Shown: positions 1,093 through 53,933 of the stretch, piece by piece
Layout: the number at the start of each line of letters is the position of its first letter
How positions within the stretch are numbered: the first letter of the stretch is position 1
Source of the DNA: Octopus bimaculoides
Taxonomy: Eukaryota
DNA length: 60,297 bases
Reading direction: 5' to 3'
NCBI RefSeq assembly: GCF_001194135.2
Contig: NC_068996.1
Location: forward strand, 9,985,502 to 10,045,798
The notes under the pieces: generated by a model
Told to the model about the DNA's origin: nothing
Seen by the model: the letters and a program-made list of their open reading frames with translations, nothing else
Database searches by the model: none
Program-made: the position numbers and the translations under genes

Positions 1093-2159
1093 ACACTTAT
1101 ATATACCTAAANNNNNNNNNNNNNNNNNNNNNNNNNNNNNNNNNNNNNNNNNNNNNNNNNNNNNNNNNNNNNNNNNNNNNNNNNNNNNNNNNNNNNNNNN
1201 NNNNNNNNNNNNNNNNNNNNNNNNNNNNNNNNNNNNNNNNNNNNNNNNNNNNNNNNNNNNNNNNNNNNNNNNNNNNNNNNNNNNNNNATATATATATATA
1301 TATATAGCTATATATATGTGTATGTATGTATGTATGTATATATGTTTGTATGCATGTATATAAACCGAAATATTGTGTATGGGTAAAAGACAAACAATAT
1401 TATAAATCTAAAAATTGAAGTTGTAAGAGGATTATGAAAAAGAAAAAAAAAAACTTTAAGAAATAGCATAGTTAAAAAAAAAAGGAAAAGAAAAAATGAA
1501 AAATGTCCCCAAATCAAATGAATGCTTAAAACTATGACAAAAACAATGAATGACAAAAAAAAAAAAATGCCACCAGAAATGATTGATAAGGAATCAAAAT
1601 AGGACTTCTTCATAAATCCATTTTCTTCACTTGATTCTTTCTGTTGTACATATTTCTTTTACGCATTCCTTAGAATATAACTTATAATCTCCATTCTCTC
1701 CATCGATCCCACCCCATGCATATCTCTTTCTCCATTTTCTCTTTTCAAAACATCAAGTTGACTCTCTTAAATCTTGTTATGATACTCCAGATTCTAAATC
1801 TTCAATCACTGTTACAGCTTCTCTCAACATTCTTTTCTAAATTGTTCTACTTCTTAGCATACCTATATATGTGTTTATAGATATGTATGTTTGTATACAC
1901 ACACACACACAATGCACGCACAATACACACACACAATGCACGCACAATACACACACACACATATATACATATATTTATATATGTAGTATGTGTGTAAAAC
2001 ATATATGCATACACATACATACAGAAATACATACATACACATACACACATTTACAACAGCTAACTTGAATGGAAATCCTTTCATTGTTACTGATATCTCT
2101 TAAAAATAGCTTTATAAAAATGTTATATTATTATCTTTATAAGCTTATCTATCTGTCTG

Positions 2160-5589: not shown

Positions 5590-6125
5590 CTTTCCTTCAT
5601 TGGACACTAAACTCCGCTTGCGAAGACCTGTTGAGGCAAGTGAAATCGTAATCGAACTAAATTCGACAACTGGCACCCATGCCGTTGTCGTCTCCTTCAT
5701 TGGACAAGAAACTCAGCTTGCAAAGACCTGTTGGAGCAAGCGAAAGCGAAATCATGATGGCACCTGTGCCCAGCATCGCCTTCCTGGCACTTGTGCCAGT
5801 GGCACATGTAAGATATTCGAGCGAAATTGTTGCCAGTGCCGCTGGACTGGCTCTTGTGCAGGTGGCACATAAAATACACCATTTTGAGAGTGGCCGTTGC
5901 CAGTACCACCTGACTGGCCTTCATGCCGGTGGCACGTAAAAGCACCTACTACACTCTCGGAGTGGTTGGCACTAGGAAGGGCATCCAGCTGTAGAAATTC
6001 TGCCAAATCAGATTGGAGCCTGGTGTAGCCATCTGGTTTCACCAGTCCTCAGTCAAATCGTCCAACCCATGCTAGCATGGAAAGCGGACGTTAAACGATG
6101 GTGATGATGATGATGATGATGACTG
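5590..6125 (+). mobile_element. RTE-LINE 3' tail or derivative (family C) with (GAT)n end
   Basis: Internal GTGCC.GTGGCAC repeats; ends CATGGAAAGCGGACGTTAAACGATGGTGATGATG. Similar to 31222-31588 and 50300-50730. Confidence 0.85.
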
Positions 6126-7516: not shown

Positions 7517-7968
7517 ATGGTACCTGTGCCAGTGCAGTGCTAAGAGCACCGTCCGTGCATGATCATTGCCAGAGCACCAGCTGTCTGGCTTCCATGCCAG
7601 TGACACGTAAATAGCACCATTTTAGCGTAATCGTTACCAGCATCGCCTTACTGGCACTTGTGCTGGTGGCACATGAAAAAAACATTCGAGCGAGGTCGTT
7701 GCCAGTGTTGCTGGACTGGCTCCTGTGCAGGTGGCACATAAAACACCATTTTGAGTGTGGCTGTTGCGAGTACCATGTGACTGGCCCTTGTGCTTGTGGC
7801 ACGTAAAAGCATCCACTACACTCTCTGAGTGGTTGGCGTTAGGAAAGGCATCCAGCTGTAGAAACTCTGCCAAATCAGATTGGAGCCTGGTGCAGCCATC
7901 TGGTTTGCCAGTCCTCGTCAAACCCATGCTAGCATGGAAAGCGAATGTTAAATGATGATGAAGATGAC
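7517..7968 (+). mobile_element. Family C element inserted in a family A SINE remnant
   Basis: Similarity to 5590-6125; family A halves at about 7460-7516 and 7980-8135. Confidence 0.82.
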
Positions 7969-16189: not shown

Positions 16190-16600
16190 TATACTTTTAT
16201 TCTTTTATTTGTTTCAGTCATTTGGCAGCGGCCATGCTGGAGCACCGCCTTTAGTCGAGCAAATCGACCCCCAGGACATATTCTTTGTAAGCCTAGTACT
16301 TATTCTATCGGTCTCTCTTGCCGAACCGCTAAATTACGGGGACCTAAACACACCAGCATCGGTTGTCAAGCGATGTTGGAGGAACAAACACAGACACACA
16401 AACATATACATATATGTGTGTATATATATATATATATATACGATGGGCTTCTTTCAGTTTCCGTCTACCAAATCCACTCATAAGGCTTTGGTCGGCCAGA
16501 GGCTATAGTAGAAGACACTTGCCCAAGGTGCCACGCAGTGGGACTGAACCCGGAACCATATGGTTGGTAAGCAAGCTACTTACCACACAGCCACTCCTGC
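16190..16600 (-). mobile_element. SINE family A
   Basis: Similarity to 4240-4725. Confidence 0.9.
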
Positions 16601-17559: not shown

Positions 17560-18012
17560 ACTCTTTTACTTGTTTCAGTCATTTGACTGTGGCCATACTG
17601 GAGCACCACCTTTAGTCGAGCATATCGACCCCGGGACTTATTCTTTGTAAGCCTAGTACTTATTCTATCGGGCTCTTTTGCTGAACCGCTAAGTTACGGG
17701 GATGTAAACACATCAGCATTGNNNNNNNNNNNNNNNNNNNNNNNNNNNNNNNNNNNNNNNNNNNNNNNNNNNNNNNNNNNNNNNNNNNNNNNNNNNNNNN
17801 NNNNNNNNNNNNNNNNNGGGGGGGGGGGACAAACACAGACACACAAATACATATATATACGACGGGCTTCTTTCAGTTTCCGTCTACCAAATCCACTCAC
17901 AAGGCTTTGGTCGGCCTGAGGCTATAGTAGAAGACACTTGCCCAAAGTGATACGCAGTGGGACTGAACCCGGAACCATGTGGTTGGTAAGCAAGCTACTT
18001 ACCACACAGCCA
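17560..18012 (-). mobile_element. SINE family A (contains an assembly gap), about 30 nt from the exon 6 donor
   Basis: Similarity to 4240-4725. Confidence 0.88.
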
Positions 18013-22507: not shown

Positions 22508-22916
22508 NNNNNNNNNNGGGAGGGAGAGAGAGGGAGGGAGAGAGAGGGAGGGAGAGAGAGAGAGAGAGAGAATGAACACCGGGATTTAGCTGGTAGACAT
22601 GCTACTATCTTCTTAAAGCCTATCTATATGTCTATTTATATATAAGCATGCATATGAATGTCTATGTTAGCATTTCTGCATATATCACTGAAGCTTACCA
22701 CAACACTTTAACTTGTCAGTTACTGACACCTAACTACCTAACCCATGCCAGAATGGAAAAAGGGACATTAAATGATGAAGATGATAATGACATATGTATG
22801 TGTGAATAGTGTGTGAAAGTAAGGGAGCAAGAGAGTATATATGAGAATGTAAATGTTTATATTGTTCTATAACTTGATGTATCTCAATTCTTTCCTCTCC
22901 CCTATTTCTTTCTTAC

Positions 22917-25281: not shown

Positions 25282-25566
25282 CCAATGTGCCGAGAAATAT
25301 AGACCTGTAATCTTCCCCTGCAGTTCAGTCAAGGCATCTACATATCCAAATGTTTCACCATCAGAGTTATTGGTCAACAGCTTACCTTGAATCACCTCCT
25401 TAAACGGGCTTGGTCTCCATGGGAACATCTCTCCACGTGGGTCGTCTTCAATACAGCTGATACCATTTTTAGTGATAACTTTGCCAGTTTCGGTATCTAA
25501 AAGAACTAACATGGATACTCTTGGAACTGGCACTCGGAGAACATGGTATTTTTTGATAAGAGCTTT
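25282..25566 (-). CDS. NXN: Nucleoredoxin exon 2
   Basis: Acceptor tttccag|AAA and donor TGG|GTAAGT; 285 nt, phase 0/0. KALIKKYHVLRVPVPRVSMLVLLDTETGKVITKNG...DDPRGEMFPWRPSPFKEVIQG...GLYFSAHW. Confidence 0.95.
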
Positions 25567-29269: not shown

Positions 29270-29655
29270 TCTCTTTTACTTGTTTCAGTCATTTGACTGT
29301 GGCCATGCTGGAGCACCGCCTTTAGTCGAGCAAATCGACCCCAGGACTTATTCTTTGGAAGCCTAGTACTTATTCTATCGGTCTCTTTTTGCCGAACTGC
29401 TAAGTTACGGGGATGTAAACATAGCAGCATTGGTTGTCAAGCGATGTTGGGGGACAAACACAGACACACACTCATATATATATACATATATACGACGGGC
29501 TTCTTTCAGTTTCCGCCTACCAAATCCACTCACAAGGCTTTGGTCGGCATGAGGCTATAGTAGAAGACACTTGCCCAAGGTGCCACACAGTGGGACTGAA
29601 CCCAGAACCATGTGGTTGGTAAGCAAGCTACTCACTACACAACCATTCCTATGCC
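29270..29655 (-). mobile_element. SINE family A
   Basis: Similarity to family A. Confidence 0.9.
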
Positions 29656-31221: not shown

Positions 31222-31588
31222 CGTGATGGCACCTGTGCCCAGTGTCGCCTTCCTGGCACTTGTGCCAGTGGCACGTGTAAAGACATTCGAGCGAGATTGT
31301 TGCCAGTGCCACTGGACTGGCTCCTGTGCAGGTGGCACGTAAAATGCACCATTTTGAGCATGGCCGTTGCCAGTACCACCTGACTGGCCTTCATGCCTGT
31401 GGCACGTAAAAGCACCCACTACACTCTCTGAGTGGTTGGCGTTAGGAAGGGCATCCAACTGTAGAAACTCTGCCAGATCAGATTGGAGCCTGGTGTAGCC
31501 ATCTGGTTTCACCAGTCCTCAGTCAAATCGTCCAACCCATGCTAGCATGGAAAGCGGACGTTAAACGACGATGATGATGATGATGATT
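31222..31588 (+). mobile_element. Family C element (5'-truncated)
   Basis: Near-identical to 5755-6120; (GAT)n tail. Confidence 0.88.
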
Positions 31589-34565: not shown

Positions 34566-35747
34566 CTACCTCCAAAACTGAACTTTAGCATAGTAGTCGT
34601 GCCAGCAATTTTGCTGTGGTACCCCAATGCACAAAAAAGCTTTACAATAATTACACCAGTAAACTGTTTTTGACTTTTTGGGAAGGTCTTTATATGCAGC
34701 ACTTGGATTTTGCTGTCTGGCTCTGTTGTGCTTTCCTAGGCATACTACACACCTATTGCTCAAAGTTGCATAGGCCGGGGGGGGGGGGCTCTCTTTCCAC
34801 CTCGTGTGGTCTGTAATCTTGTAGAAGTTTGTGTTTGGATGTATTTTCACCGGTAATAGTCGGTAATAATTGCCTACAAGTTCATGGCAGAGATTTTCAA
34901 CAAACGTGTGGAATGTAAACATTCTTTGCCCCTGGGGATTATGTGGCTTATAATGTCCCACGATAACATATGCATTGTACGCAGCCCACAAAAAACTTCC
35001 AAATAAGATGACGTGGCCATTTGTAATGATGTCTGCTCCGATGCAGTTTGGTAAGTTGGTCATTTTTATCGGTGCCACCCATGTATGCATTGCAACTTTG
35101 GACAGCTTTTGGGCAAACCACAGGAAGCCTTCTGTGCTCTTTACTATCGTACCTTTGTACTTGTATTAAGGGGGGGGGAGGGTTATGAATGCAGAAGTTA
35201 CACAATAAATGGGCTTTTTGTTGCACCAAACAATTACTGCTACAATTCCATTGAATAAGAGTTTGAATTGCCTCCTGCAGTTTTGATTTTTTGATTTGAT
35301 GAGGTGTTTTGGAAAAAGTTTTCTATTTGTAAGTGCCGTGCACTTCCTCTGTTTTCCATAAAAAACTCGCACAAATATACATTAGTGTAGAATCTGTCTG
35401 TAAATGCACAGTAACATTGGTCACGAAAACAGTTCCAACATACGAACAAGGTTTTCAAGTGTTTCGGCATCTTCCCTACAACCTGTATATACTTCTGCAT
35501 TTGAAATATAGCCATTCTCACTACCACAAACAAGGAAGGTTTTGATACCCCACTTTATCAGTTGATCTTTGAGATATTGTTTTATAGATAGGGAGTTTTT
35601 TTTTGTTGGAATCATCCCCTCGTCAAGTGACAAACTGCTTCTCAGTGGGTAATGCAACTTGAATTTTTCTAACAAGTGATTGAACACGGGGCTGGATTTG
35701 TAAATCTTGTTGGATTTGTTTAGTTCATTTACACTATGTTCGGCCAT
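34566..35747 (-). pseudogene. piggyBac (PGBD/DDE_Tnp_1_7-like) transposase pseudogene
   Basis: Fragments in several frames: LSLDEGMIP...IKQYLKD..IKWGIKTF...NGYISNAEVYTG; DRFYT; NAYMGGTDKNDQ; C-terminal Cys-rich domain RCVVC...WCNYCKAFLC...CW. The N-terminal part is absent. Confidence 0.93.
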
Positions 35748-40254: not shown

Positions 40255-40680
40255 TATATTTTACTTGTTTCAGTCATTTGACTGTGGCCATACTGGGGCA
40301 CTACCTTGAAGGGTTTCAGTCAAACAAATTGATCCCAGGACTTATTTTTTTTAAGCCTAGTATTTATTTGATCAGTATCTTTTGCTGAACCACTAAGTTA
40401 CAGGGACGTAAACACACCAACACCAGTTGTCAAGCAGTGGCAGGGGGCAAACATAGACACAGAGACACACATGCATAGATACAGACACACATACGATGGT
40501 TTTTTTTTTTTCATTTTCCATTTACCGAATCCACCCGCAAGGCTTTGGTTGGCCCAAGGCTATAATAGAAAACACTTGCCTAAGGCACCATGCAGTGGGA
40601 ATGAACCCAGAACCATGTGGATGGGAAGCAAGCTTCTTACCACATAGCCTGTGCTTATTCTTACCATACAGCCACGCCTG
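40255..40680 (-). mobile_element. SINE family A
   Basis: Similarity to family A. Confidence 0.82.
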
Positions 40681-43074
40681 TAAAACGTCTTAATTTAAGT
40701 GCAAGACAGGAGCTTTTTGCTATCATAGAACCAGAAGCATTGTTCAGGTAATTGATATGAAAGTGGTTAAGTTGTAGGAAAGATAAACTATAGGGCAAAG
40801 TTAAATATGTGTATGTAAAGTGATAATGGAAGGGCCCCTTGGGTACAGCTTGACAGAAGTTGACTTGGAAGAGGGTATTTAGAAAAGAAAACCTGGTGTT
40901 TATAGCTGTGGCAATTTATGTAGTAAGTTCTGTACAACATATGATAACATGCCAGTTAAAATGGTGATGAAATGTTTTTGACAAGCCCGTAAACATTAGT
41001 AATTTATGTAAATAATGAATAAAGTATTAAAATGCTCCTGTTGTAATTTGTAGTGGTGGCAGTAGTAGTATGTAGTACGTAGTAGCAGCAGCAGCAGTAA
41101 TAATGATGCAGGTGGCTATGATGGTGATGGTATATAGCAATGCTCCAATGGAAAAATGAAATCTTCAAAAGAAGCAGACAGGTTAACCCCCACTACTCAC
41201 ATACACACAGACACAGACACACTTATACATTGCTAGCAGTTGTAATGATTGGCGTGGAAGGTAGGGGTGGAAAACATCATCCAAGCCTATCTTCCAATAA
41301 TGTGGAGAAAAACGACAACACTAGGAGTACTTAGAATACCTACTTCTTTTAAAACCAGATTTATACAGGCTTGCCTGTGTATATTTCTTAAATGCAGCAG
41401 CTGTGTGTATGCCTAAAAGGGATATATATATATATATAATATAAACGTATATATAAAAAAAGGTGTGTGTGTCTATATATATATATATATATAAAAATAT
41501 GGATATACATACACACATACACATGCACTCAAGCATATACACACGCTCACTGGTAGCAGCTGTTTTCCTTTTTCTGAGAAATTCGATTCCACCCTCTTGA
41601 AGGAGATAACAGCAGGAAGAAAAGCCAAAGTGTTGATTTATTTACGGTGGGTCTCAATTTGCTAGGTAGTGACCCATACACTATGGTTTCAGGATCAACT
41701 TCTGTGGCACTATCAAAGCAGTATCAAGTGATTAATTTGCAATAAATGCCACAGACAAAACTCAATAGATGATATTGCACGCTGCAAGCATAATATATTC
41801 TATTGAGTGAATAATTCTATTTGGGATTGGTAAAACCTGAAGCAGGTAAAGTTATAAATAATACCCATTAAATATTGGTTTAGAAAAAACCCTTTGGATA
41901 GATAAAATCGAAAGCTGCCTGTGGGACATGAGCTTGATATTTACATACTATATTATTTATAGCTTTATCAGCTTCAAGCTTCACTGTTCCAAAAAAGGAA
42001 TATTGAATTAAATATTTTTATGTATATTCACAACTGTGTGTTTGTGTGGATGTGTACTTTGGAGTCACAAGTGTACAACTTTATGAATGAGTGTGTAAAT
42101 GTAAGTCAAATGTGTGTTTATATGTGTGCGCACAAAAGATGTGCATGAATGCATTTGTATGTGTATTTTTTTTAATGTTTGGAACGAAATTTACCTAGCA
42201 GGTAAAAACACAGGTCCAAAATTTTTTTACTACCAAGACCAATGTTTTCAAACTTAATATCAAAACAAACACAATATTGATAATAATAATAATAATTATT
42301 ATTATTATGATAATATTTGTACGTCAATCGAATCAGATAAATCCAATAATGGAAAAGTAGTGTTTCAAATCAGTCTAAAAATGTTTCTACATTCATTCGT
42401 TTTAACAATGAAGTTTTTCAAGAGGCTGTTCAAAGTGTTTTCATCACCCCGCAAGCTCCAATTTTAGGGGGTGGGGTGGGGGTGTGTGTGAAAATCCACC
42501 CACTGTTCCCAAGCCTATGTTTATATATTTACATTTTATTTATTAATGTTCTTTGTATGCATAAGATGCATTTAAATAAGTGGTGTTTTTTATGTGTTTA
42601 AATATTTATATATATATATGTACTATACAGACACATATATTAATACGCATAAATATATAAATACACATCAGTAATCTCAAACATGTACGAGCTTACCCCC
42701 CCCCCCTACAGGTATTAGTAATAAAAGCAAAGTGTGGAATATATACACACACACACACACACACAAAAATTCAATTACATTTATTTCAAATTTCTATTTA
42801 TACATACACACATAGATAAACATACGTAAACATATAAATGTGTGGATATATACAGACAGATGTGCCCTTATATAAGTACACAACCGAGCATACAAACAAT
42901 GTAATGTCAAAAGCAAATAGTCATAAGTATACAAATACATGAAAAAACATAGGAGCATATATATATATATATATATATANNNNNNNNNNNNNNNNNNNNN
43001 NNNNNNNNNNNNNNNNNNNNNNNNNNNNNNNNNNNNNNNNNNNNNNNNNNNNNNNNNNNNNNNNNNNNNATATA

Positions 43075-43468
43075 TGTATTACTCTTTTATTTGTTTCAGT
43101 CATTTGACAGCGGCCATGCTGGAGCAGTGCTTTTAGTCAAACAAATCGACCCCGGGACTTATTCTTTGTAAGCCTAGTACTTATTCTTTTTGGTCTCTAT
43201 TGCTGAACTGCTAAGTTATGGGGACGCAGACATACCAACATCGGTTGTCAAGTCATTGGGAGGGGGTGGGGTCAAACAGACATACAAACATACACACACA
43301 CACATATATACGACAAGCTTCTTTCAGTTTCTGTCGACCAAATCCACTCACAAGGCTTTGGTCGGCCCATGGCTATAGCAGAAGACACTTGCCCAAGGTG
43401 CCATGTAGTGGGACTGAACCCAGAACCATGTGGTTGGTAAGCAAGTTACTTACCACACAGCCACTCCT
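43075..43468 (-). mobile_element. SINE family A
   Basis: Similarity to family A. Confidence 0.88.
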
Positions 43469-46950: not shown

Positions 46951-48932
46951 CTAATGAAAGGAAGTGGCACTCAACAGACACATTTGATATGAGTTACATA
47001 TATTATAACAGTTTGGCTTGGGTTCATGCACATTCATTTATTCATTTCAGTTCACTTTTCTATGCTAATTTAGGGATTCATTTGAGGCAACATGTTACAA
47101 TTGGATGCCTTTCCTATTGCCAATACCTTAACTGTTTTTCAAGTCACTGAGAAATTCCATGCTCTTTGAAAGCAGAGTAACCTGTCATTACTCCATCACC
47201 AATTCATTGGGACAGTGACAAGCAGAGCCATGGAAGGAAATCAACATTAGCACACACTCACATCTATATATGCACATCTTATCATTGTTTTAATGTTCAC
47301 TTTTCCATAGTTGCATGGGTCAGACGAAACTTTGGTGAGGTGTAATAAAGTAGATGCTCTTCCAGTTGCCAACTCTTACCAGATTCCACATAAGATAATA
47401 TTTTCTCTAGTCCTTTGCACAATAAACAACACAATGACTGACCATACTTTCATGGAAGATTGCAAATAAACGACATTATTTGCAACTTTTGTGATCTCAT
47501 GTCAGGACAAGCAGAAACACATTAATTCATGCACAATTTATATATATATATATATNNNNNNNNNNNNNNNNNNNNNNNNNNNNNNNNNNNNNNNNNNNNN
47601 NNNNNNNNNNNNNNNNNNNNNNNNNNNNNNNNNNNNNNNNNNNNNNNNNNNNNNNNNNNNNNNNNNNNNNNNNNNNNNNNNNNNNNNNNNNNNNNNNNNN
47701 NNNNNNNNNNNNNNNNNNNNNNNNNNNNNNNNNNNNNNNNNNNNNNNNNNNNNNNNNNNNNNNNNNNNNNNNNNNNNNNNNNNNNNNNNNNNNNNNNNNN
47801 NNNNNNNNNNNNNNNNNNNATATATATATGCCAGCATGGACAACAGACGTTAAATGATGATAATAATATCTACAAATTTATATTTATGCTGATTTCATAT
47901 ATTATATACACATATGGTAGAAGTCAACTCCTGTTCAAATATGATCAGGTCTTGAAAAATTGTGGATTTCTTGGATGCTATCATGGAAAGTCACAAGGAG
48001 GGCACAGCCAACAGTTGCTGGCCAATTCCAGACTCAAGCAATTCCAGACTTAGGCTTTCCTGATTAAAAAATGAACAGTGTTACTCCTGGAAAGGGCTGC
48101 TCAGTCTCTTGAAGTGCTGTTTGCTGAATCTCTCCATTGTCATATATTGAAAAAGAAGCAACCAATAGCCCTAAATGCCTATGTGCAGCTTTCCAATTGC
48201 ATAATTCCACCACAGAACATCTTCCATAGAGTTTATTTATAAGAAGTTCCCTCGTGTGAAATTAATCATAGTAAATGAAGTGAGGGTATTCACTTTTCAG
48301 ATAGAACACCTTTCTTCCCAGTGGCCCAATATTGGTTGGGACAACAAGAAGCTGAATAACCCACAAGTTCTATATCTGAGTATTCTTCTCCTAGGCAGAT
48401 GTTTGTAACTAGAAATAAGGGGTCATTACTCCCAAGTGGTCTATACAATCATTCACCATTAGAAATATTCCTAAGTCTCCACACAATTGTCACAAAATTG
48501 TTGATGCCTTATTGGGTTTATCTATCCTTTTGATAGGTACTGTTTGTTGATATTTCAATCAACTGCTAGCTCTGCACTTTAGAATTTCACTGGAATAAAA
48601 ACATCCCTTACTCAAAAAAAAAAAAAAAAAAAAAAGGCAGGAATGGATTAGATGGATTGGTAATAAGCAGTGCACCAAGCCATAAAAATCTTGTTGCAAT
48701 TTGCTACCATCTAAGCAACGCTAATAAAGAATAAATGACATTAAATGAAATGAATTAATTTATATGCGTGTGCATGTTAATGCTTGTCTCTCAGTGCTTC
48801 ACAACCAAAGTATGGTAATTATGTCCAGCAAAAAGAGTCAGAAATAACAAAATTAAGACAAACACACTGACTAATCATAACTGTTCAAAATGGTGCCTCA
48901 GCATGGCTGCAGTCTAATGACTAACAATAGAA

Positions 48933-49253: not shown

Positions 49254-50145
49254 CTGACAGTGTGTCTCAAGCACACAGGCGCTTTAGGCTGGAGCTTATT
49301 CAGTTTCCAAAGCATTTAAGCAGTTGGATTTCAATGGGTGACCAATGGCTCATAGGGTTAACCCTACCAGATGTCATTGGGATTCATTTTCAGCTGAGTG
49401 GAATGGTGTAACATGAAATGAGGTGCCTAGCATAAAGATATGGTACCTCTTAGTCTGTGAACTGAACCCATGAACTAACAATCCCAAGCCTAATACTCTA
49501 ACCACACACATTTGTTTGTTTCCTCTCTGTCATAGGCTGAATGCTGTACCTGAAGCAGTAATTTTAGGGAGGAGTGATCTTATTGCCACCAACACTTTTC
49601 TGTTTTTGTTTTTCGTAAAACTTAAGTTTTTATACCACCACTTCAAGAGAATAGCGGGTGTGGCACCTCATATTCACTGTAAAAGTAAACACACATCAGT
49701 TTCCTTGTTCAGACGATCACATGTGAAAAGCACCCACATTCTTCAATGCAAATTTTGCCTACCTATTTTCACTCACAAGCCCAATGCAAAAGCAAATGAC
49801 ACCTTGCCAAGGTTTTGTGCAGTGAAACTGAACCTAACATCACATTGAGGAGAAAATGTCTTAAACCACATGATCATACAAGTTAGCCAATGAAATTGAC
49901 CATAGTACTTGTTTTTAAAATCTAGTACTTATTCTATCAATCTCTTTCTTGATAAACATAAACACTGAGAGCCAAACACAGACACACATATGTATGTATA
50001 TATTCAGCCTGTGCCAGTGAAGCTTTACATAGCAACGATAACTTACTGGCTGCTGTCTAGCAATGATTGTACTTTGAGTACATTCGATTTGTATTTACAT
50101 ATTATATATATATATACATGAATATATTATATATATATATATATG

Positions 50146-50730
50146 GCCATGACTGTTGAAGACATGCATAAGCTTGCAAGGAATGAAGCCAGTATGCTCC
50201 GATGGATGTATAATGTCAGTGTGCATACTTGACAGAGTCTAAGTACCTTGAGAGAAAAGTTGGACCTAAGAAGCGTAGGTGAAATCGAAACTAGTGGGGT
50301 GCTAAGAGTGTGATCATTGCCAGAGCAGCTGACTTGCTTCCATGCCGGTGGTATGTAAAAAGCACCATTTGAGAGTGATCGTTACCAACGCCACCTTACT
50401 GGCATTTGTGCCGGTGGCACATGAAAAAATATTTGATCAAGGATGTTGCCAGTGCCGCTGAACTGGCTCCTGTGCAGATGGCACGTAAAAAACACCATTT
50501 GAGTGTGGCCGTTGCCAGTACCACCTGACTGGCCCTCGTGGTGGTGGCACGTAAAAGCACCCTCTACACTCTCGGAGTGGTTGGCATTAGGAAGGGCATC
50601 CAGCTGTAGAAACTCTGCCAGATCATATTGGAGCCTGGTGCAGCCTTCTGGTTCGCGAGTCCTTAGTCAAATCGTCCAACCCATGCCAGCATAGAAAGCG
50701 GACGTTAAACGATGATGATGATGGTGATGA
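50146..50730 (+). mobile_element. RTE ORF2 fragment joined to a family C tail
   Basis: AMTVEDMHKLARNEASMLRWMYNVSVHT*QSLSTLREKLDLRS followed by family C sequence and (GAT)n. Confidence 0.8.
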
Positions 50731-50731
50731 G

Positions 50732-50763
<32 letters not shown>

Positions 50764-51496
50764 GTATAGGAGTGGCTGCGTGGTAAGTAGCTTGCTTACC
50801 AACTACATGGTTCCAGGTTCAGTCCCACTGCGTGGTACCTTGGGCCGAGAAACTGAAAGTCATATATAAATATATATATATATTTAAAGTGTGTCTCCTT
50901 GTATTGACACGTAGGGCTCCAGCCGTAGAAAATCTAACTCAACAAATTTTGTCTGCTACATGCAGATAAGGAAAAGTAGATGTTAAAACGACGATAGAAG
51001 TTGATACACACACACACACACACACATAAATCTTATGACGTGGAACGCACCCCAGCAGTCAATTTCTTACTGTGAAATCCATGTAAACGAAATACTGACT
51101 GCAAAGCCTGCAAAATCAAAAACCACTCACTATAAAAAGTGATAGTACAAAAAGAAATCAGCACCACTCCATATCCTGAATATAAGGGTGGGTGGAATTG
51201 TCTGGAAATATTGTTAAAAACGAATTCTAGAACTTCATTGTTTCAAGCGAACTACAAGGATCACACACACACAGACATGCATAACTATATGTTAGTTTCT
51301 ATGAAGATATATGTTATACAATATTATATCAAATGTTGAATTGAGTTTATTTTATTTTAAAGCAAGGCTAAGAATATCAACGGGACACTGGCTGATGGCG
51401 TGGCTCAGTACCGAGGATAGAGACCGGTTAAATAAACTGTCAGGCGAAACAAGAAGTCCCATTCAACAGAAACTTTACTAATATACATCATAATGC

Positions 51497-51534
<38 letters not shown>

Positions 51535-51741
51535 AAAAGAATGAGAGTTCGATAAAATTAATACTGGTGTCGATACAACCTACTAAAAACAGGAAGGCGG
51601 TGCCGCAGAATGGTCATAGCCTAACAACTGAAATCCTTCGCATTTTTCTATCCAAAAGGGTCTTTCAACTCAATATTTACATCCTATCATTTATAGTAGT
51701 TATGTGCTTCGAAATCGTATTACAAAAATGAGTTAAATATA

Positions 51742-51861
51742 TATATAATTAATAACTGACAGAAGTTACACAGTGAGTCATAGTCCGTGAATTTCGTGCA
51801 CGAGTCCGAAACTCTCGGCCCTTGAGTCACTCGGTAACTTCTGTCGATTATTAATAATATA
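51742..51861. repeat. About 120-bp element with terminal inverted repeats
   Basis: TTAATAACTGACAGAAGTTAC vs GTAACTTCTGTCGATTATTAA (19/21); TGAGTCA in each arm. Confidence 0.75.
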
Positions 51862-52355
51862 GCAAAATCACACACACACACACACACAAACATATAAATT
51901 TATATATATATATATATANNNNNNNNNNNNNNNNNNNNNNNNNNNNNNNNNNNNNNNNNNNNNNNNNNNNNNNNNNNNNNNNNNNNNNNNNNNNNNNNNN
52001 NNNNNNNNNNNNNNNNNNNNNNNNNNNNNNNNNNNNNNNNNNNNNNNNNNNNNNNNNNNNNNNNNNNNNNNNNNNNNNNNNNNNNNNNNNNNNNNNNNNN
52101 NNNNNNNNNNNNNNNNNNNNNNNNNNNNNNNNNNNNNNNNNNNNNNNNNNNNNNNNNNNNNNNNNNNNNNNNNNNNNNNNNNNNNNNNNNNNNNNNNNNN
52201 NNNNNNNNNNNNNNNNNNNNNNNNNNNNNNNNNNNNNNNNNNNNNNNNNNNNNNNNNNNNNNNNNNNNNNNNNNNNNNNNNNNNNNNNNNNNNNNNNNNN
52301 NNNNNNNNNNNNNNGTTGGGAAAAAAAGGGAATTATACATATTTTTAAGTGATAT

Positions 52356-52670
52356 TTTGTCGGTCTATCATGGGTAGGTAAGAATTAGTACCACCCACAG
52401 AACAACCAAGGGCACTTTTGGTAACCACCCCGCCTCCTCGCACCTCGTCTTGCTCTCAAACCCTTATCGATAATATGGACCTTCAAATTGTCCCAGATTT
52501 GTACAGACGATTGTTGCATGAGAACTTTATAAAAAAAAAAAAAATCAGGCCTGGAAATAAACAAGACACGGGGCAAACATTTTTCACACGAGTTGTTGGG
52601 GGCAAGATGGCGAAGATAAATAATCCCTTTGATCTTGTCTTTTCAACTGAAATCTTTGAACAGCCGACAG
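52356..52670 (-). pseudogene. Decayed duplicate of NXN exon 1 (pseudo-exon) in intron 1
   Basis: Collinear nucleotide anchors to exon 1: a 17/17 match GGGCAAGATGGCGAAGA (52600-52616 vs 56660-56676), 18/23 at 52356-52378 vs 56380-56402, and shared ACTTTTG.TAA, TCTCAAA, TCGATA, TTGTCCC and CTTTATAAAA in order. Peptide remnants are GLFIFAILP, FYKVLMQQS, DNLKV and YQK, with stops and frameshifts. Confidence 0.8.
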
Positions 52671-53933
52671 CTAAACAAATATTAATATATTTATATGGGT
52701 TGCGCGAGTTGTACGTATGTACTACTTGTATATGCGTGCGTGTGCGCGTGTACGGCCAGTGCGATGTTTTGATTGCATTAGGGATCAAATTATATACATG
52801 TAATATACACACGTAATGAACATACACACACACACACATATATACATATACAGAAGGGATTTGTAAACATAATTACGGTGTGCGTAAAACATTCAGTTTA
52901 AACAAGCCACAACCAGCGACATTTCGATATCACTCAGGGATTTCTGAGAATATGTTCCTGGGACATCTACCGCCGGGTCAGTCTCAAAGAGGGTCTGCGA
53001 TGGCCATACGTACAAACCCTTTAAACCATTGTTCCAGAAGAAACCATTAAAATTATATTTAAATGGATGGGGATGATAACTACACACATACCACCTGTCT
53101 TTTAGACACTCGTATACAAACACTATATATACACACATATATATGTATATTTACAAGTAAATACACATACATACACGAGAGAGAAAGAGTTCTTTCTTGA
53201 TGGTGCAACAGGACCCAGAGAGAAAACCTACCCCTGTTTAAATACCGTTGCCTTACAAGATACATGTGTGTGCATGCATATATTTATACAAAGAAATTTA
53301 CACATACACGCACACATATATTCACATACAAACACACATGGATACATAGGTGTAATAAACATACAGAGATGCTTTACTCCACGCAGAAACTATTCAGGTT
53401 TTGCAAGATCTAAATTCACTTCAATACATACGCATATATATATGTATGCGTGTGTGTGTGTGTGTACAGAGAGAGAGAGAGAGATACACACACACACAAA
53501 CTATTAGTCCAGAGTTCAACTCCTTGCTCATCATACAATTTACATGATAAACTGCATCGCAAAACTGAGTGGCAACAACAGTGTAACATCTTAGATTGCA
53601 ATAAATACATGAACTTTATATATCCATGTATGTATGTATGTATTTGAGGCTATAACTGGAGTTTTCTCGGTGTGTGGGATCGGCTAGCTTATCTGGGAAA
53701 CTCGGGATTTTGCAGGGTACGGGGTTCAGGCCAAATAAACTACTACACTCTACGTGGTATTGGGTACCTTTTCTCCCGCTTGTTAAATATCATCACCCAC
53801 GCACGCACCCTCACACACCCATCCATCTAGTTATCCATCTGTCTCCTGTCTCTATACCTATGCATGATTTTTTTCTCTATTTGTATATCTATCTATCCAT
53901 CCATCTACCTACCTACCTACCTATCTATCTATC

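What the first reader, a model, noticed from the sequence alone, without database searches (positions are those of the whole stretch)
52356..53010. Hidden decayed duplicate of NXN exon 1 about 4 kb inside intron 1
At least seven collinear anchors link 52356-52670 to exon 1 (56380-56725), including a 17-nt exact match and an 18/23 match. A weaker match to the start region (TATGGCC-ATCG...TCAGAAATC) lies near 52930-53010. The copy has the same orientation, several frameshifts and a stop, and no donor at the homologous position. It lacks about 57 nt of the Ser-rich DGGLLSSASSSSSS stretch and reads NVCPVSC where the live exon reads NVAPSGC. It may record the state before the Ser insertion, a failed alternative-first-exon or promoter duplication, or a CpG-rich element still active as a promoter. 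A TTTGTTTAG acceptor-like site sits at its 5' edge (about 52671).
Basis: partly seen in the sequence, partly recalled or inferred. Interest (0 to 1): 0.7.

Follow-up and report, generated by a model that had tools for sequence, protein, structure and literature searches.

The report
Decayed partial copy of NXN exon 1
About 3.7 kb into the first intron of a nucleoredoxin gene lies a real but badly decayed, non-coding copy of the last three quarters of the gene's first exon, which is an ordinary relic of an old local duplication rather than a hidden working exon.

Summary
The core observation is real. Window 52357-52677 (minus strand) is homologous to codons 45-164 of nucleoredoxin (NXN) exon 1 (56375-56866, minus strand), in the same orientation.

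- DNA core: 54/71 identities, z = 15.7 against shuffles.
- The rest of the copy, down to the exon's last codons, is also significant.
- Seven collinear exact anchors are present.
- The frameshift-tolerant protein-to-DNA score is 114, against 41±7.5 for shuffles.

The copy matches this gene's own exon 1 and no other NXN thioredoxin-like domain. It carries 7-8 frameshifts and 2-3 stops, has no donor, and is 58 nt shorter in the Ser-rich loop.

The claimed start-codon match (52980-53008) is not above chance. The "acceptor-like" TTTGTTTAG lies inside the homology, aligned to the pyrimidine-rich codons CSSLL.

No homology to the promoter, the flanks or exon 2 is detectable. No other pseudo-exons were found.

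CpG observed/expected is raised (1.0 against 0.38 for the window). Most of that signal lies outside the proven copy, in a patchy 2-kb domain.

Best reading: a dead relic of a partial local exon duplication, which is a known class. The copy sits in a 1.8-kb contig between N gaps, so its placement depends on scaffolding. No cephalopod orthologues could be reached, so the age of the copy and the order of the Ser-run change remain untested.

The parts
52357..52677 (-). Decayed, 5'-truncated copy (pseudo-exon) of NXN exon 1, homologous to codons 45-164. It has 7-8 frameshifts, 2-3 stops and no donor.
   Evidence: Frameshift-tolerant protein-to-DNA alignment aligns aa 45-164 with 52677-52357: 49/132 identical, score 114 against 41.2±7.5 for shuffles (maximum 62 of 200). 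The strict alignment scores 65 against 30.3±3.8. The global DNA alignment gives 199/275 identities, 135 gap columns and K2P about 0.35.
52600..52670 (-). Best-preserved block of the copy (codons about 47-69, ...KDKIIGLFFAILP), including the 17-nt exact match at 52600-52616.
   Evidence: 54/71 identities with 56660-56725. Smith-Waterman score 31 against 11.4±1.25, z = 15.7.
52356..52534 (-). 3' part of the copy, reaching the last codons of exon 1 (W-LYQK..PW..LP..DR.RQ).
   Evidence: DNA score 26.5 against 14.4±2.3, with 0 of 300 shuffles reaching it. Protein aa 128-164 alone scores 39 against 22.9±4.4, with 1 of 500 shuffles reaching it.
56375..56866 (-). Live NXN exon 1 (164 codons, phase 0), the source or sister of the copy. 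It encodes the degenerate N-terminal thioredoxin-like domain with a Ser-rich loop.
   Evidence: The ORF starts MAAIENLLG (compare Mya arenaria MARTLENLLG). Donor CAG|GTACGTAAGT. Pfam Thioredoxin_8 E = 8.6e-5, below the family cut-off. In phase with exon 2 at 25566.
52980..53008 (-). It is not distinguishable from chance.
   Evidence: Score 10.0. This is reached by 58% of 1000 shuffles and by 50% of 116 real intron chunks. The N-terminal protein tests are null.
52672..52680 (-). TTTGTTTAG acceptor-like motif. It lies within the homology and aligns to the pyrimidine-rich codons CSSLL of the live exon.
   Evidence: Sequence. Alignment of 52677-52660 with live 56730-56715.
52531..52544 (+). A14 homopolymer (T14 in the coding sense), inside the interval where the copy is 58 nt shorter than the live exon.
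   Evidence: Sequence. Anchor spacing is 136 nt in the live exon and 78 nt in the copy.
51919..52314 (.). Assembly gap (396 N) that begins 42 nt beyond the copy's 3' end. It hides whatever follows the copy.
   Evidence: The readable 41-nt tail (52315-52355) matches neither the start of exon 2 (p = 0.29) nor the start of intron 1 (p = 0.97).
50900..53010 (.). Patchy domain of retained CpG (observed/expected about 0.7-1.4), on both sides of the gap and including the copy.
   Evidence: Window-wide observed/expected is 0.38. For 52356-53010 it is 1.01 (top 0.2-0.3%). The only rival windows lie at 50900-51900.

Best explanation
The segment is a non-functional relic (pseudo-exon) left by an old local DNA duplication. 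That duplication copied at least the 3' three quarters of NXN exon 1 into what is now intron 1, in the same orientation.

Shown:
- Homology to codons 45-164 of exon 1.
- Specificity for this exon over other NXN domains.
- Loss of the reading frame (7-8 frameshifts, 2-3 stops).
- Loss of the donor.
- No detectable start codon.
- The copy is unique in the window apart from exon 1.

Inferred:
- The copy arose by unequal recombination or a replication-slippage-type tandem duplication.
- It either lacked the start codon and promoter from the outset or lost them early.
- It has since drifted neutrally and is removed with intron 1.
- Homology in the flanks is gone because both sides there evolve freely, whereas in the exon pair one partner is constrained.
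- The 58-nt length difference in the Ser-rich loop could be a later (TCN)n expansion in the live exon, a deletion in the copy, or both.
For: - Homology statistics.
- Same strand.
- Specific to exon 1: score 65, against 27-37 for the gene's central domain and for the Mya, Tegillarca, spider and frog N-terminal domains.
- Disruptions to the reading frame.
- No GT at the homologous donor position.
- The only relative of the segment in the 60-kb window is exon 1.
- No copies of exons 2-6 anywhere else in the window, including just beyond the gap.
- The 41-nt tail does not match exon 2.
- No Rfam family matches, and no other ORF of note on either strand.
- A 17-nt exact run is expected about once in 275 aligned positions at 72% identity (my calculation). 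No selection on the copy needs to be invoked.
- Exon-like duplicates in adjacent introns are a described, common class (PMC9013439).
Against: - The extent of the original duplication cannot be seen, because no flank homology survives.
- A gap starts 42 nt after the copy.
- CpG observed/expected around the copy is well above the intron background. This is unexpected for long-dead DNA in a CpG-depleted locus and leaves room for a regulatory role.
- The copy lies in a 1784-nt contig bounded by N gaps, and three gaps lie between it and exon 1. Its position and orientation therefore rest on scaffolding.
- No transcript, methylation or cross-species data could be consulted.
Confidence: 0.7

Rival explanations
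1. Remnant of a once-functional alternative first exon with its own promoter, of the UGT1A or protocadherin type, that later died.
For: - The copy has the same orientation and lies downstream of exon 1 in intron 1, which is the geometry needed.
- There is a CpG excess over 52356-53010.
- An ATGGCC lies at about 53005, in the right order.
Against: - The start-region match is at chance level.
- No homology to the 5' UTR or promoter.
- No donor.
- Homology stops at codon 45 and is replaced by AT-rich and microsatellite sequence.
- Transitions (31) do not exceed transversions (45), and 135 gap columns show heavy, unconstrained decay.
Confidence: 0.1
2. The decayed copy, together with the neighbouring CpG-retaining 2 kb, now serves as an intronic regulatory element: an alternative promoter, an enhancer or a poison-exon source.
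For: - CpG observed/expected is 1.01 over 52356-53010 and 1.0-1.4 over 50900-51900, against 0.38 for the window and a background median of 0.3.
- The acceptor-like motif at 52672-52680.
Against: - The proven copy itself has observed/expected 0.72, only the 91st percentile.
- Only 3 CpGs are shared with the live exon.
- G+C is 41%.
- About half of the CpGs in 52671-53010 sit in a (GC/GT)-type simple repeat.
- The stretch between the copy and exon 1 (53065-54098) is CpG-poor.
- There are no expression or chromatin data.
Confidence: 0.08
3. 5'-truncated retrocopy (processed pseudogene fragment) of NXN mRNA, inserted into the gene's own intron.
For: - The copy is 5'-truncated and its detectable homology ends within 5 nt of the exon 1/intron 1 boundary.
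- The sequence beyond it is hidden by a 396-N gap.
Against: - The 41 nt after the copy do not match the start of exon 2 (score 9 against 8.0±1.4, p = 0.29).
- No exon 2-6 homology beyond the gap or anywhere else in the window.
- The only poly(A) run is internal and on the wrong strand.
Confidence: 0.07
4. Scaffolding artefact. The 1.8-kb contig that carries the copy belongs elsewhere, for example to a paralogous NXN pseudogene, and was placed in intron 1 by mistake.
For: - The copy lies in contig 52315-54098, bounded by N gaps.
- The window has nine gaps, and three of them lie between the copy and exon 1.
Against: - At about 72% identity with many indels, the copy is not a haplotig or a collapsed or duplicated read artefact.
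- Mate-pair scaffolding usually places small contigs correctly at this scale.
- The homology itself would remain real wherever the contig lies.
Confidence: 0.05

Closest known systems
Unannotated tandem exon duplicates or pseudo-exons in adjacent introns (Letunic, Copley and Bork 2002, as cited in PMC9013439; Ivanov and Pervouchine 2022, PMC9013439)
   Same: An exon-derived sequence lies in the neighbouring intron, in the same orientation, and is detectable only by similarity to the exon.
   Different: - Most catalogued cases are internal exons with preserved splice sites and frame, which makes them candidates for mutually exclusive exons.
- This one derives from a first exon, is 5'-truncated, and has lost its frame and donor.
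Arrays of alternative first exons made by tandem duplication (UGT1A, clustered protocadherins; UGT1A is described in PMC9013439)
   Same: A homologue of the first exon lies downstream of exon 1 and upstream of the shared exon 2.
   Different: - The known arrays have intact ORFs, a start codon, a donor and a promoter for each exon.
- None of these is present or detectable here.
Processed pseudogenes (retrocopies)
   Same: A 5'-truncated, frame-disrupted copy of coding sequence, whose homology ends near an exon boundary.
   Different: - No continuity into exon 2 in the 41 readable bases, and no other exon copies.
- A poly(A) tail and target-site duplications cannot be assessed because of the gap.
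Nucleoredoxin (NXN) N-terminal thioredoxin-like domain
   Same: - The live exon 1 encodes this domain. It shares the MA..ENLLG start and the ...EI(V/I)FVS.D...MPW.ALP core with bivalve, spider and frog NXN.
- The copy retains FAILP, FYK, DNL and PW..LP..DR.RQ.
   Different: - The live domain has lost the CxxC motif and carries a roughly 27-residue Ser-rich loop insertion that is absent from the other species.
- The copy's loop is 58 nt shorter than the live one.

Membership tests
Tandem exon duplication relic (pseudo-exon) | Statistically significant similarity to a neighbouring exon of the same gene | tested here: met
   DNA z = 15.7. Second block: 0 of 300 shuffles reach the score. Protein-to-DNA score 114 against 41±7.5. 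Specific to exon 1.
Tandem exon duplication relic (pseudo-exon) | Lies in the adjacent intron, in the same orientation as the parent exon | tested here: met
   Plus/plus alignment. The copy lies 3.7-4.0 kb into the 30.8-kb intron 1. Caveat: it is carried on a 1.8-kb contig between N gaps.
Tandem exon duplication relic (pseudo-exon) | Coding capacity and splice signals lost | tested here: met
   7-8 frameshifts and 2-3 stops. No GT at the homologous donor position. No significant start-codon homology.
Tandem exon duplication relic (pseudo-exon) | Not included in mature transcripts | not testable with these tools
   No transcript data are available. The protein collections hold no close relative of this gene's product.
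Alternative first exon array (UGT1A or protocadherin type) | Intact ORF that begins with its own start codon | tested here: not met
   Homology begins at codon 45. The upstream ATGGCC match is at chance level. The frame is broken.
Alternative first exon array (UGT1A or protocadherin type) | Functional 5' splice donor at the end of the exon | tested here: not met
   The live exon reads CAAAGGCAG|GTACGT. The copy reads CAAAATATCACTT.
Alternative first exon array (UGT1A or protocadherin type) | Own promoter upstream of each variable exon | tested here: inconclusive
   No similarity to the live upstream region. There is a CpG excess at 52671-53010 (observed/expected 1.31), but it is partly a simple repeat. 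Promoter activity itself cannot be tested.
Processed pseudogene (retrocopy) | Homology continues across the exon-exon junction without the intron | tested here: not met
   The 41-nt tail against the start of exon 2 gives p = 0.29. No exon 2-6 homology beyond the gap. The test is limited by the 396-N gap.
Processed pseudogene (retrocopy) | 3' poly(A) tract and target-site duplications | not testable with these tools
   The 3' side of the copy is inside the gap at 51919-52314.
CpG-island-type promoter | At least 200 nt with CpG observed/expected above 0.6 and G+C above 50% (the usual vertebrate criteria) | tested here: inconclusive
   Observed/expected is 1.01 over 655 nt, which meets the criterion. 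G+C is 41%, which does not, although the window mean is 37%. The criteria are not calibrated for this genome.
Nucleoredoxin gene (host gene identity) | Central thioredoxin-like domain with WCPPC, and overall similarity to NXN proteins | tested here: met
   The exon 2-3 peptide (YFSAHW|CPPCK) hits Thioredoxin_8 at E = 3e-23. The exon 2-5 peptide hits NXN or NXN-like proteins of bivalves and vertebrates at 42-50% identity, with E values from 1e-87 to 1e-57.

The most novel reading that the evidence does not exclude
The dead exon copy sits within a roughly 2-kb intronic domain (50.9-53.0 kb) that has escaped CpG depletion. That domain would then be an unmethylated regulatory element, such as an internal promoter or enhancer of NXN, or of an unannotated transcript. 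It would have been seeded by duplication of the exon 1 CpG island and still be active, and the copy's acceptor-like site might occasionally yield a poison exon.
Probability: 0.07. Interest if true: 0.45.

Novelty: new member of a known kind. Interest (0 to 1): 0.2.

Why it matters
The direct value is mainly for annotation. The segment should be masked as a pseudo-exon, so that gene predictors and protein-to-genome aligners do not build a false NXN exon or a second gene model from it.

It is also a small natural record of how the N-terminal domain of this nucleoredoxin has drifted. That domain has lost its CxxC motif and its low-complexity loop has grown. With orthologous loci the copy could be dated, and it could show whether the Ser run expanded after the duplication.

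If the CpG-retaining domain proved to be regulatory, it would be an example of an exon/CpG-island duplication seeding an intronic element. Nothing found here requires that.

Tried and rejected
- **Chance similarity:** rejected by the dinucleotide-shuffle tests and by real-intron controls, which score 26-35 against 65 for the copy.
- **Start-codon extension of the copy:** tested three ways. It never exceeds chance.
- **Copy of another NXN domain or an ancient paralogue:** rejected, scores 27-37 against 65.
- **Interspersed repeat:** rejected. The segment has no other relative in the window, whereas real repeat families here have 4 to 15 or more copies.
- **Retrocopy:** no support.
- **Wider segmental duplication:** no similarity between 52315-55190 or 50000-51918 and the exon 1 flanks. 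This is uninformative at this divergence.
- **Structured RNA:** no Rfam match in the whole window.
- **Overlapping gene on either strand:** no ORF of note was seen in 52315-54098.
- **Orthologues:**
  - The exon 1 peptide has no hit in the 5.8-billion-protein collection.
  - The conserved exons 2-5 find nothing closer than 50% identity. No cephalopod or other close locus could therefore be fetched.
  - The DNA collections on offer are viral, metagenomic or prokaryotic, so they were not scanned.
- **CpG fate analysis:** 3 CpGs are shared, and 3 of the aligned live CpGs read TG or CA in the copy. The counts are too few to show methylation history.
- **Selection on the 17-nt exact block:** it contains AAGATGGCG, which from memory resembles a YY1-type motif. 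Selection is not needed, because a run of that length is expected by chance at 72% identity. The motif resemblance was not tested.

Full report
**Setting**

The window is a gappy scaffold with nine N runs and 37% G+C. The gene in question is on the minus strand.

- Exon 1 runs from the ATG at 56866 to 56375. It has 164 codons, is in phase 0, and ends at the donor CAG|GTACGTAAGT.
- Exon 2 starts at 25566, after the acceptor ttttccag.
- Further exons lie at about 24628-24425 (carrying CPPC), 23015-22917, 20753-20661 and 18155-18045.
- Intron 1 is therefore about 30.8 kb. The finding lies 3.7-4.0 kb into it.

The gene is a nucleoredoxin homologue.

- The exon 2-3 peptide hits Pfam Thioredoxin_8 at E = 3e-23.
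- The exon 2-5 peptide hits NXN or NXN-like proteins of bivalves (Tegillarca, Mya) and vertebrates at 42-50% identity, with E values down to 8e-87.
- The exon 1 peptide matches Thioredoxin_8 only weakly, at E = 8.6e-5 and below the family cut-off.
- Its start (MAAIENLLG) and its core (EIIFVSTD...MPWMALP) line up with the N-terminal domain of Mya, spider and frog NXN.

The organism could not be identified. Nothing closer than 50% identity exists in the protein collection.

Yes, for 52356-52677.

- BLASTN finds 52600-52670 against 56660-56725 at 54/71 identity. The Smith-Waterman score is 31, against 11.4±1.25 for 300 dinucleotide shuffles (z = 15.7). The opposite orientation scores 13.
- With that core removed, 52356-52534 against 56380-56536 still scores 26.5, against 14.4±2.3. 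No shuffle of 300 reaches it.
- Seven collinear exact anchors of at least 7 nt cover 62 nt, including the 17-mer GGGCAAGATGGCGAAGA. In 500 shuffles the maximum was 6 anchors and 46 nt.
- A frameshift-tolerant protein-to-DNA alignment that I wrote gives a score of 65, against 30.3±3.8 for shuffles. Nine real intron chunks, scored on both strands, give 26-35.
- With milder frameshift penalties the same method gives 114, against 41.2±7.5, and aligns residues 45-164 with 52677-52357.
- The last 37 residues are significant on their own: 39 against 22.9±4.4, reached by 1 of 500 shuffles. The copy therefore reaches the very end of the exon (W-LYQK..PW..LP..DR.RQ).

- NVCPVSC in the copy aligns with NVAPSGC in the live exon.
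- The copy is 58 nt shorter between shared anchors.
- Frameshifts and stops are present.
- There is no GT at the homologous donor position.

**What is not real**

The 'weaker match to the start region' is the best local alignment of the first 24 codons to the 423 nt upstream of the copy, and it falls at 52980-53008. Its score of 10.0 is reached by 58% of shuffles and by half of the real intron chunks. The broader DNA and protein tests of that part are also null. Demonstrable homology begins at codon 45.

The TTTGTTTAG 'acceptor' at 52672-52680 lies inside that homology. It aligns with the pyrimidine-rich coding sequence TGTTCTTCTCTGCTG (CSSLL) of the live exon. It is decayed coding sequence and not a signal at the edge of the copy.

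**What it is**

The copy is related specifically to this gene's exon 1. It scores 65 against exon 1. Against the gene's own central domain and the N-terminal domains of Mya, Tegillarca, spider and frog NXN it scores 27-37, which is noise level. It shares lineage-specific features of exon 1, namely FAILP, FYK and DNL.

- It has no other relative in the window. Genuine repeat families in the window have many copies.
- No Rfam family matches, and no other ORF of note was seen on either strand.
- The global alignment gives 199/275 identities, 135 gap columns, 31 transitions against 45 transversions, and K2P of about 0.35. This is heavy, unconstrained decay.
- At 72% identity a 17-nt exact run is expected about once over the aligned length, so the best-preserved block needs no selective explanation (my calculation).

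**How it arose**

A retrocopy would continue into exon 2. The 41 readable bases after the copy do not match the start of exon 2 (p = 0.29) or the start of intron 1 (p = 0.97). No homology to exons 2-6 exists beyond the gap or elsewhere in the window.

No homology survives between the flanks of the copy and the flanks of exon 1. This is expected at this age. In the exon pair one partner is constrained, whereas in the flanks both drift, so the absence of flank homology says nothing about the original extent of the duplication.

The most economical account is a local, same-orientation DNA duplication that covered at least codons 45-164. The downstream copy was either dead on arrival, with no start codon or promoter, or was inactivated early.

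Exon-like duplicates in adjacent introns are a described and common class. First-exon arrays such as UGT1A show what the functional outcome looks like (PMC9013439). This copy lacks every feature of that outcome.

**The Ser-rich loop**

Other NXN N-terminal domains have 2-5 residues between strand β1 and the (former) CxxC helix. The live exon has about 30 residues there, and the copy has about 19 codons fewer than the live exon.

This fits a stepwise expansion, with the copy as an intermediate snapshot. The missing interval in the copy also holds a 14-nt homopolymer (52531-52544), and pseudogenes are prone to deletions. The direction of the change therefore cannot be decided without an outgroup.

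**CpG**

- The window is CpG-depleted: observed/expected is 0.38, and the median for background windows is 0.30.
- Live exon 1 has 1.12.
- The proven copy has 0.72, which is only the 91st percentile.
- 52356-53010 has 1.01, in the top 0.2-0.3% of windows.
- 52671-53010 has 1.31. About half of its CpGs sit in a GC/GT-type simple repeat.
- The only comparable windows lie at 50900-51900, just across the gap.
- The stretch between the copy and exon 1 (53065-54098) is CpG-poor.
- Only 3 CpGs are shared between the copy and the live exon.

So there is a patchy, roughly 2-kb domain of retained CpG around the copy. It remains unexplained. It keeps a regulatory reading alive at low probability, but it is not evidence of promoter activity.

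**Caveats**

- The copy lies in a 1784-nt contig (52315-54098) bounded by N gaps. Three gaps separate it from exon 1, so its position and orientation depend on scaffolding.
- At 72% identity it cannot be a haplotig or an assembly duplication.
- No transcripts, methylation data or related genomes were reachable.

**Verdict**

This is a real, old, 5'-truncated pseudo-exon copy of NXN exon 1. It is a new member of a well-known kind. The readings as an alternative first exon, a promoter or an acceptor are unsupported. Interest is low.

Noticed in passing
window 34566-35747 (minus strand): Remnant of a piggyBac-type transposase in NXN intron 1. ORF 35421-35747 hits Pfam DDE_Tnp_1_7 at E = 3.8e-14. 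Adjacent ORFs look like the broken remainder of the same transposase, including a Cys-rich C-terminus.
   Followed up: partly
window 54732-55178 and at least 15 other sites (for example 29272-29640, 16201-16600, 40255-40639, 43083-43464): An abundant SINE-like repeat of about 400 nt, with copies 65-79% identical to this one. A short module of it at 50760-50845 matches other copies at 87-93%. This gives an internal yardstick: the exon copy is about as diverged as the older repeat copies.
   Followed up: partly
window 50311-50730; also 7560-7966, 5779-6116, 31248-31586: A second repeat family, 84-88% identical between copies, with internal repeats of about 65 and 130 nt (50306-50561).
   Followed up: no
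window 50900-51900 and 52356-53010: CpG observed/expected of about 1.0-1.4 on both sides of the N gap, in a locus whose overall value is 0.38. No homology to exon 1 or its flanks was found in 50900-51900.
   Followed up: partly
window 56540-56640 (live exon 1): The N-terminal thioredoxin-like domain of this NXN has no CxxC motif. It carries two low-complexity insertions relative to bivalve, spider and frog NXN: an S/D/T-rich stretch at residues 17-44, and the Ser-rich loop EDGGLLSSASSSSSS.
   Followed up: partly
window 1112-1287, 17722-17817, 22508-22517, 42980-43069, 47556-47819, 51919-52314, 54099-54291, 55191-55785, 59324-59874: Nine N gaps in 60 kb. Where I read the sequence beside a gap (51919-52314 and 54099-54291), TA or TG/GT microsatellites adjoin it. 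Three of the gaps fall in the 4.5 kb between the copy and exon 1.
   Followed up: no
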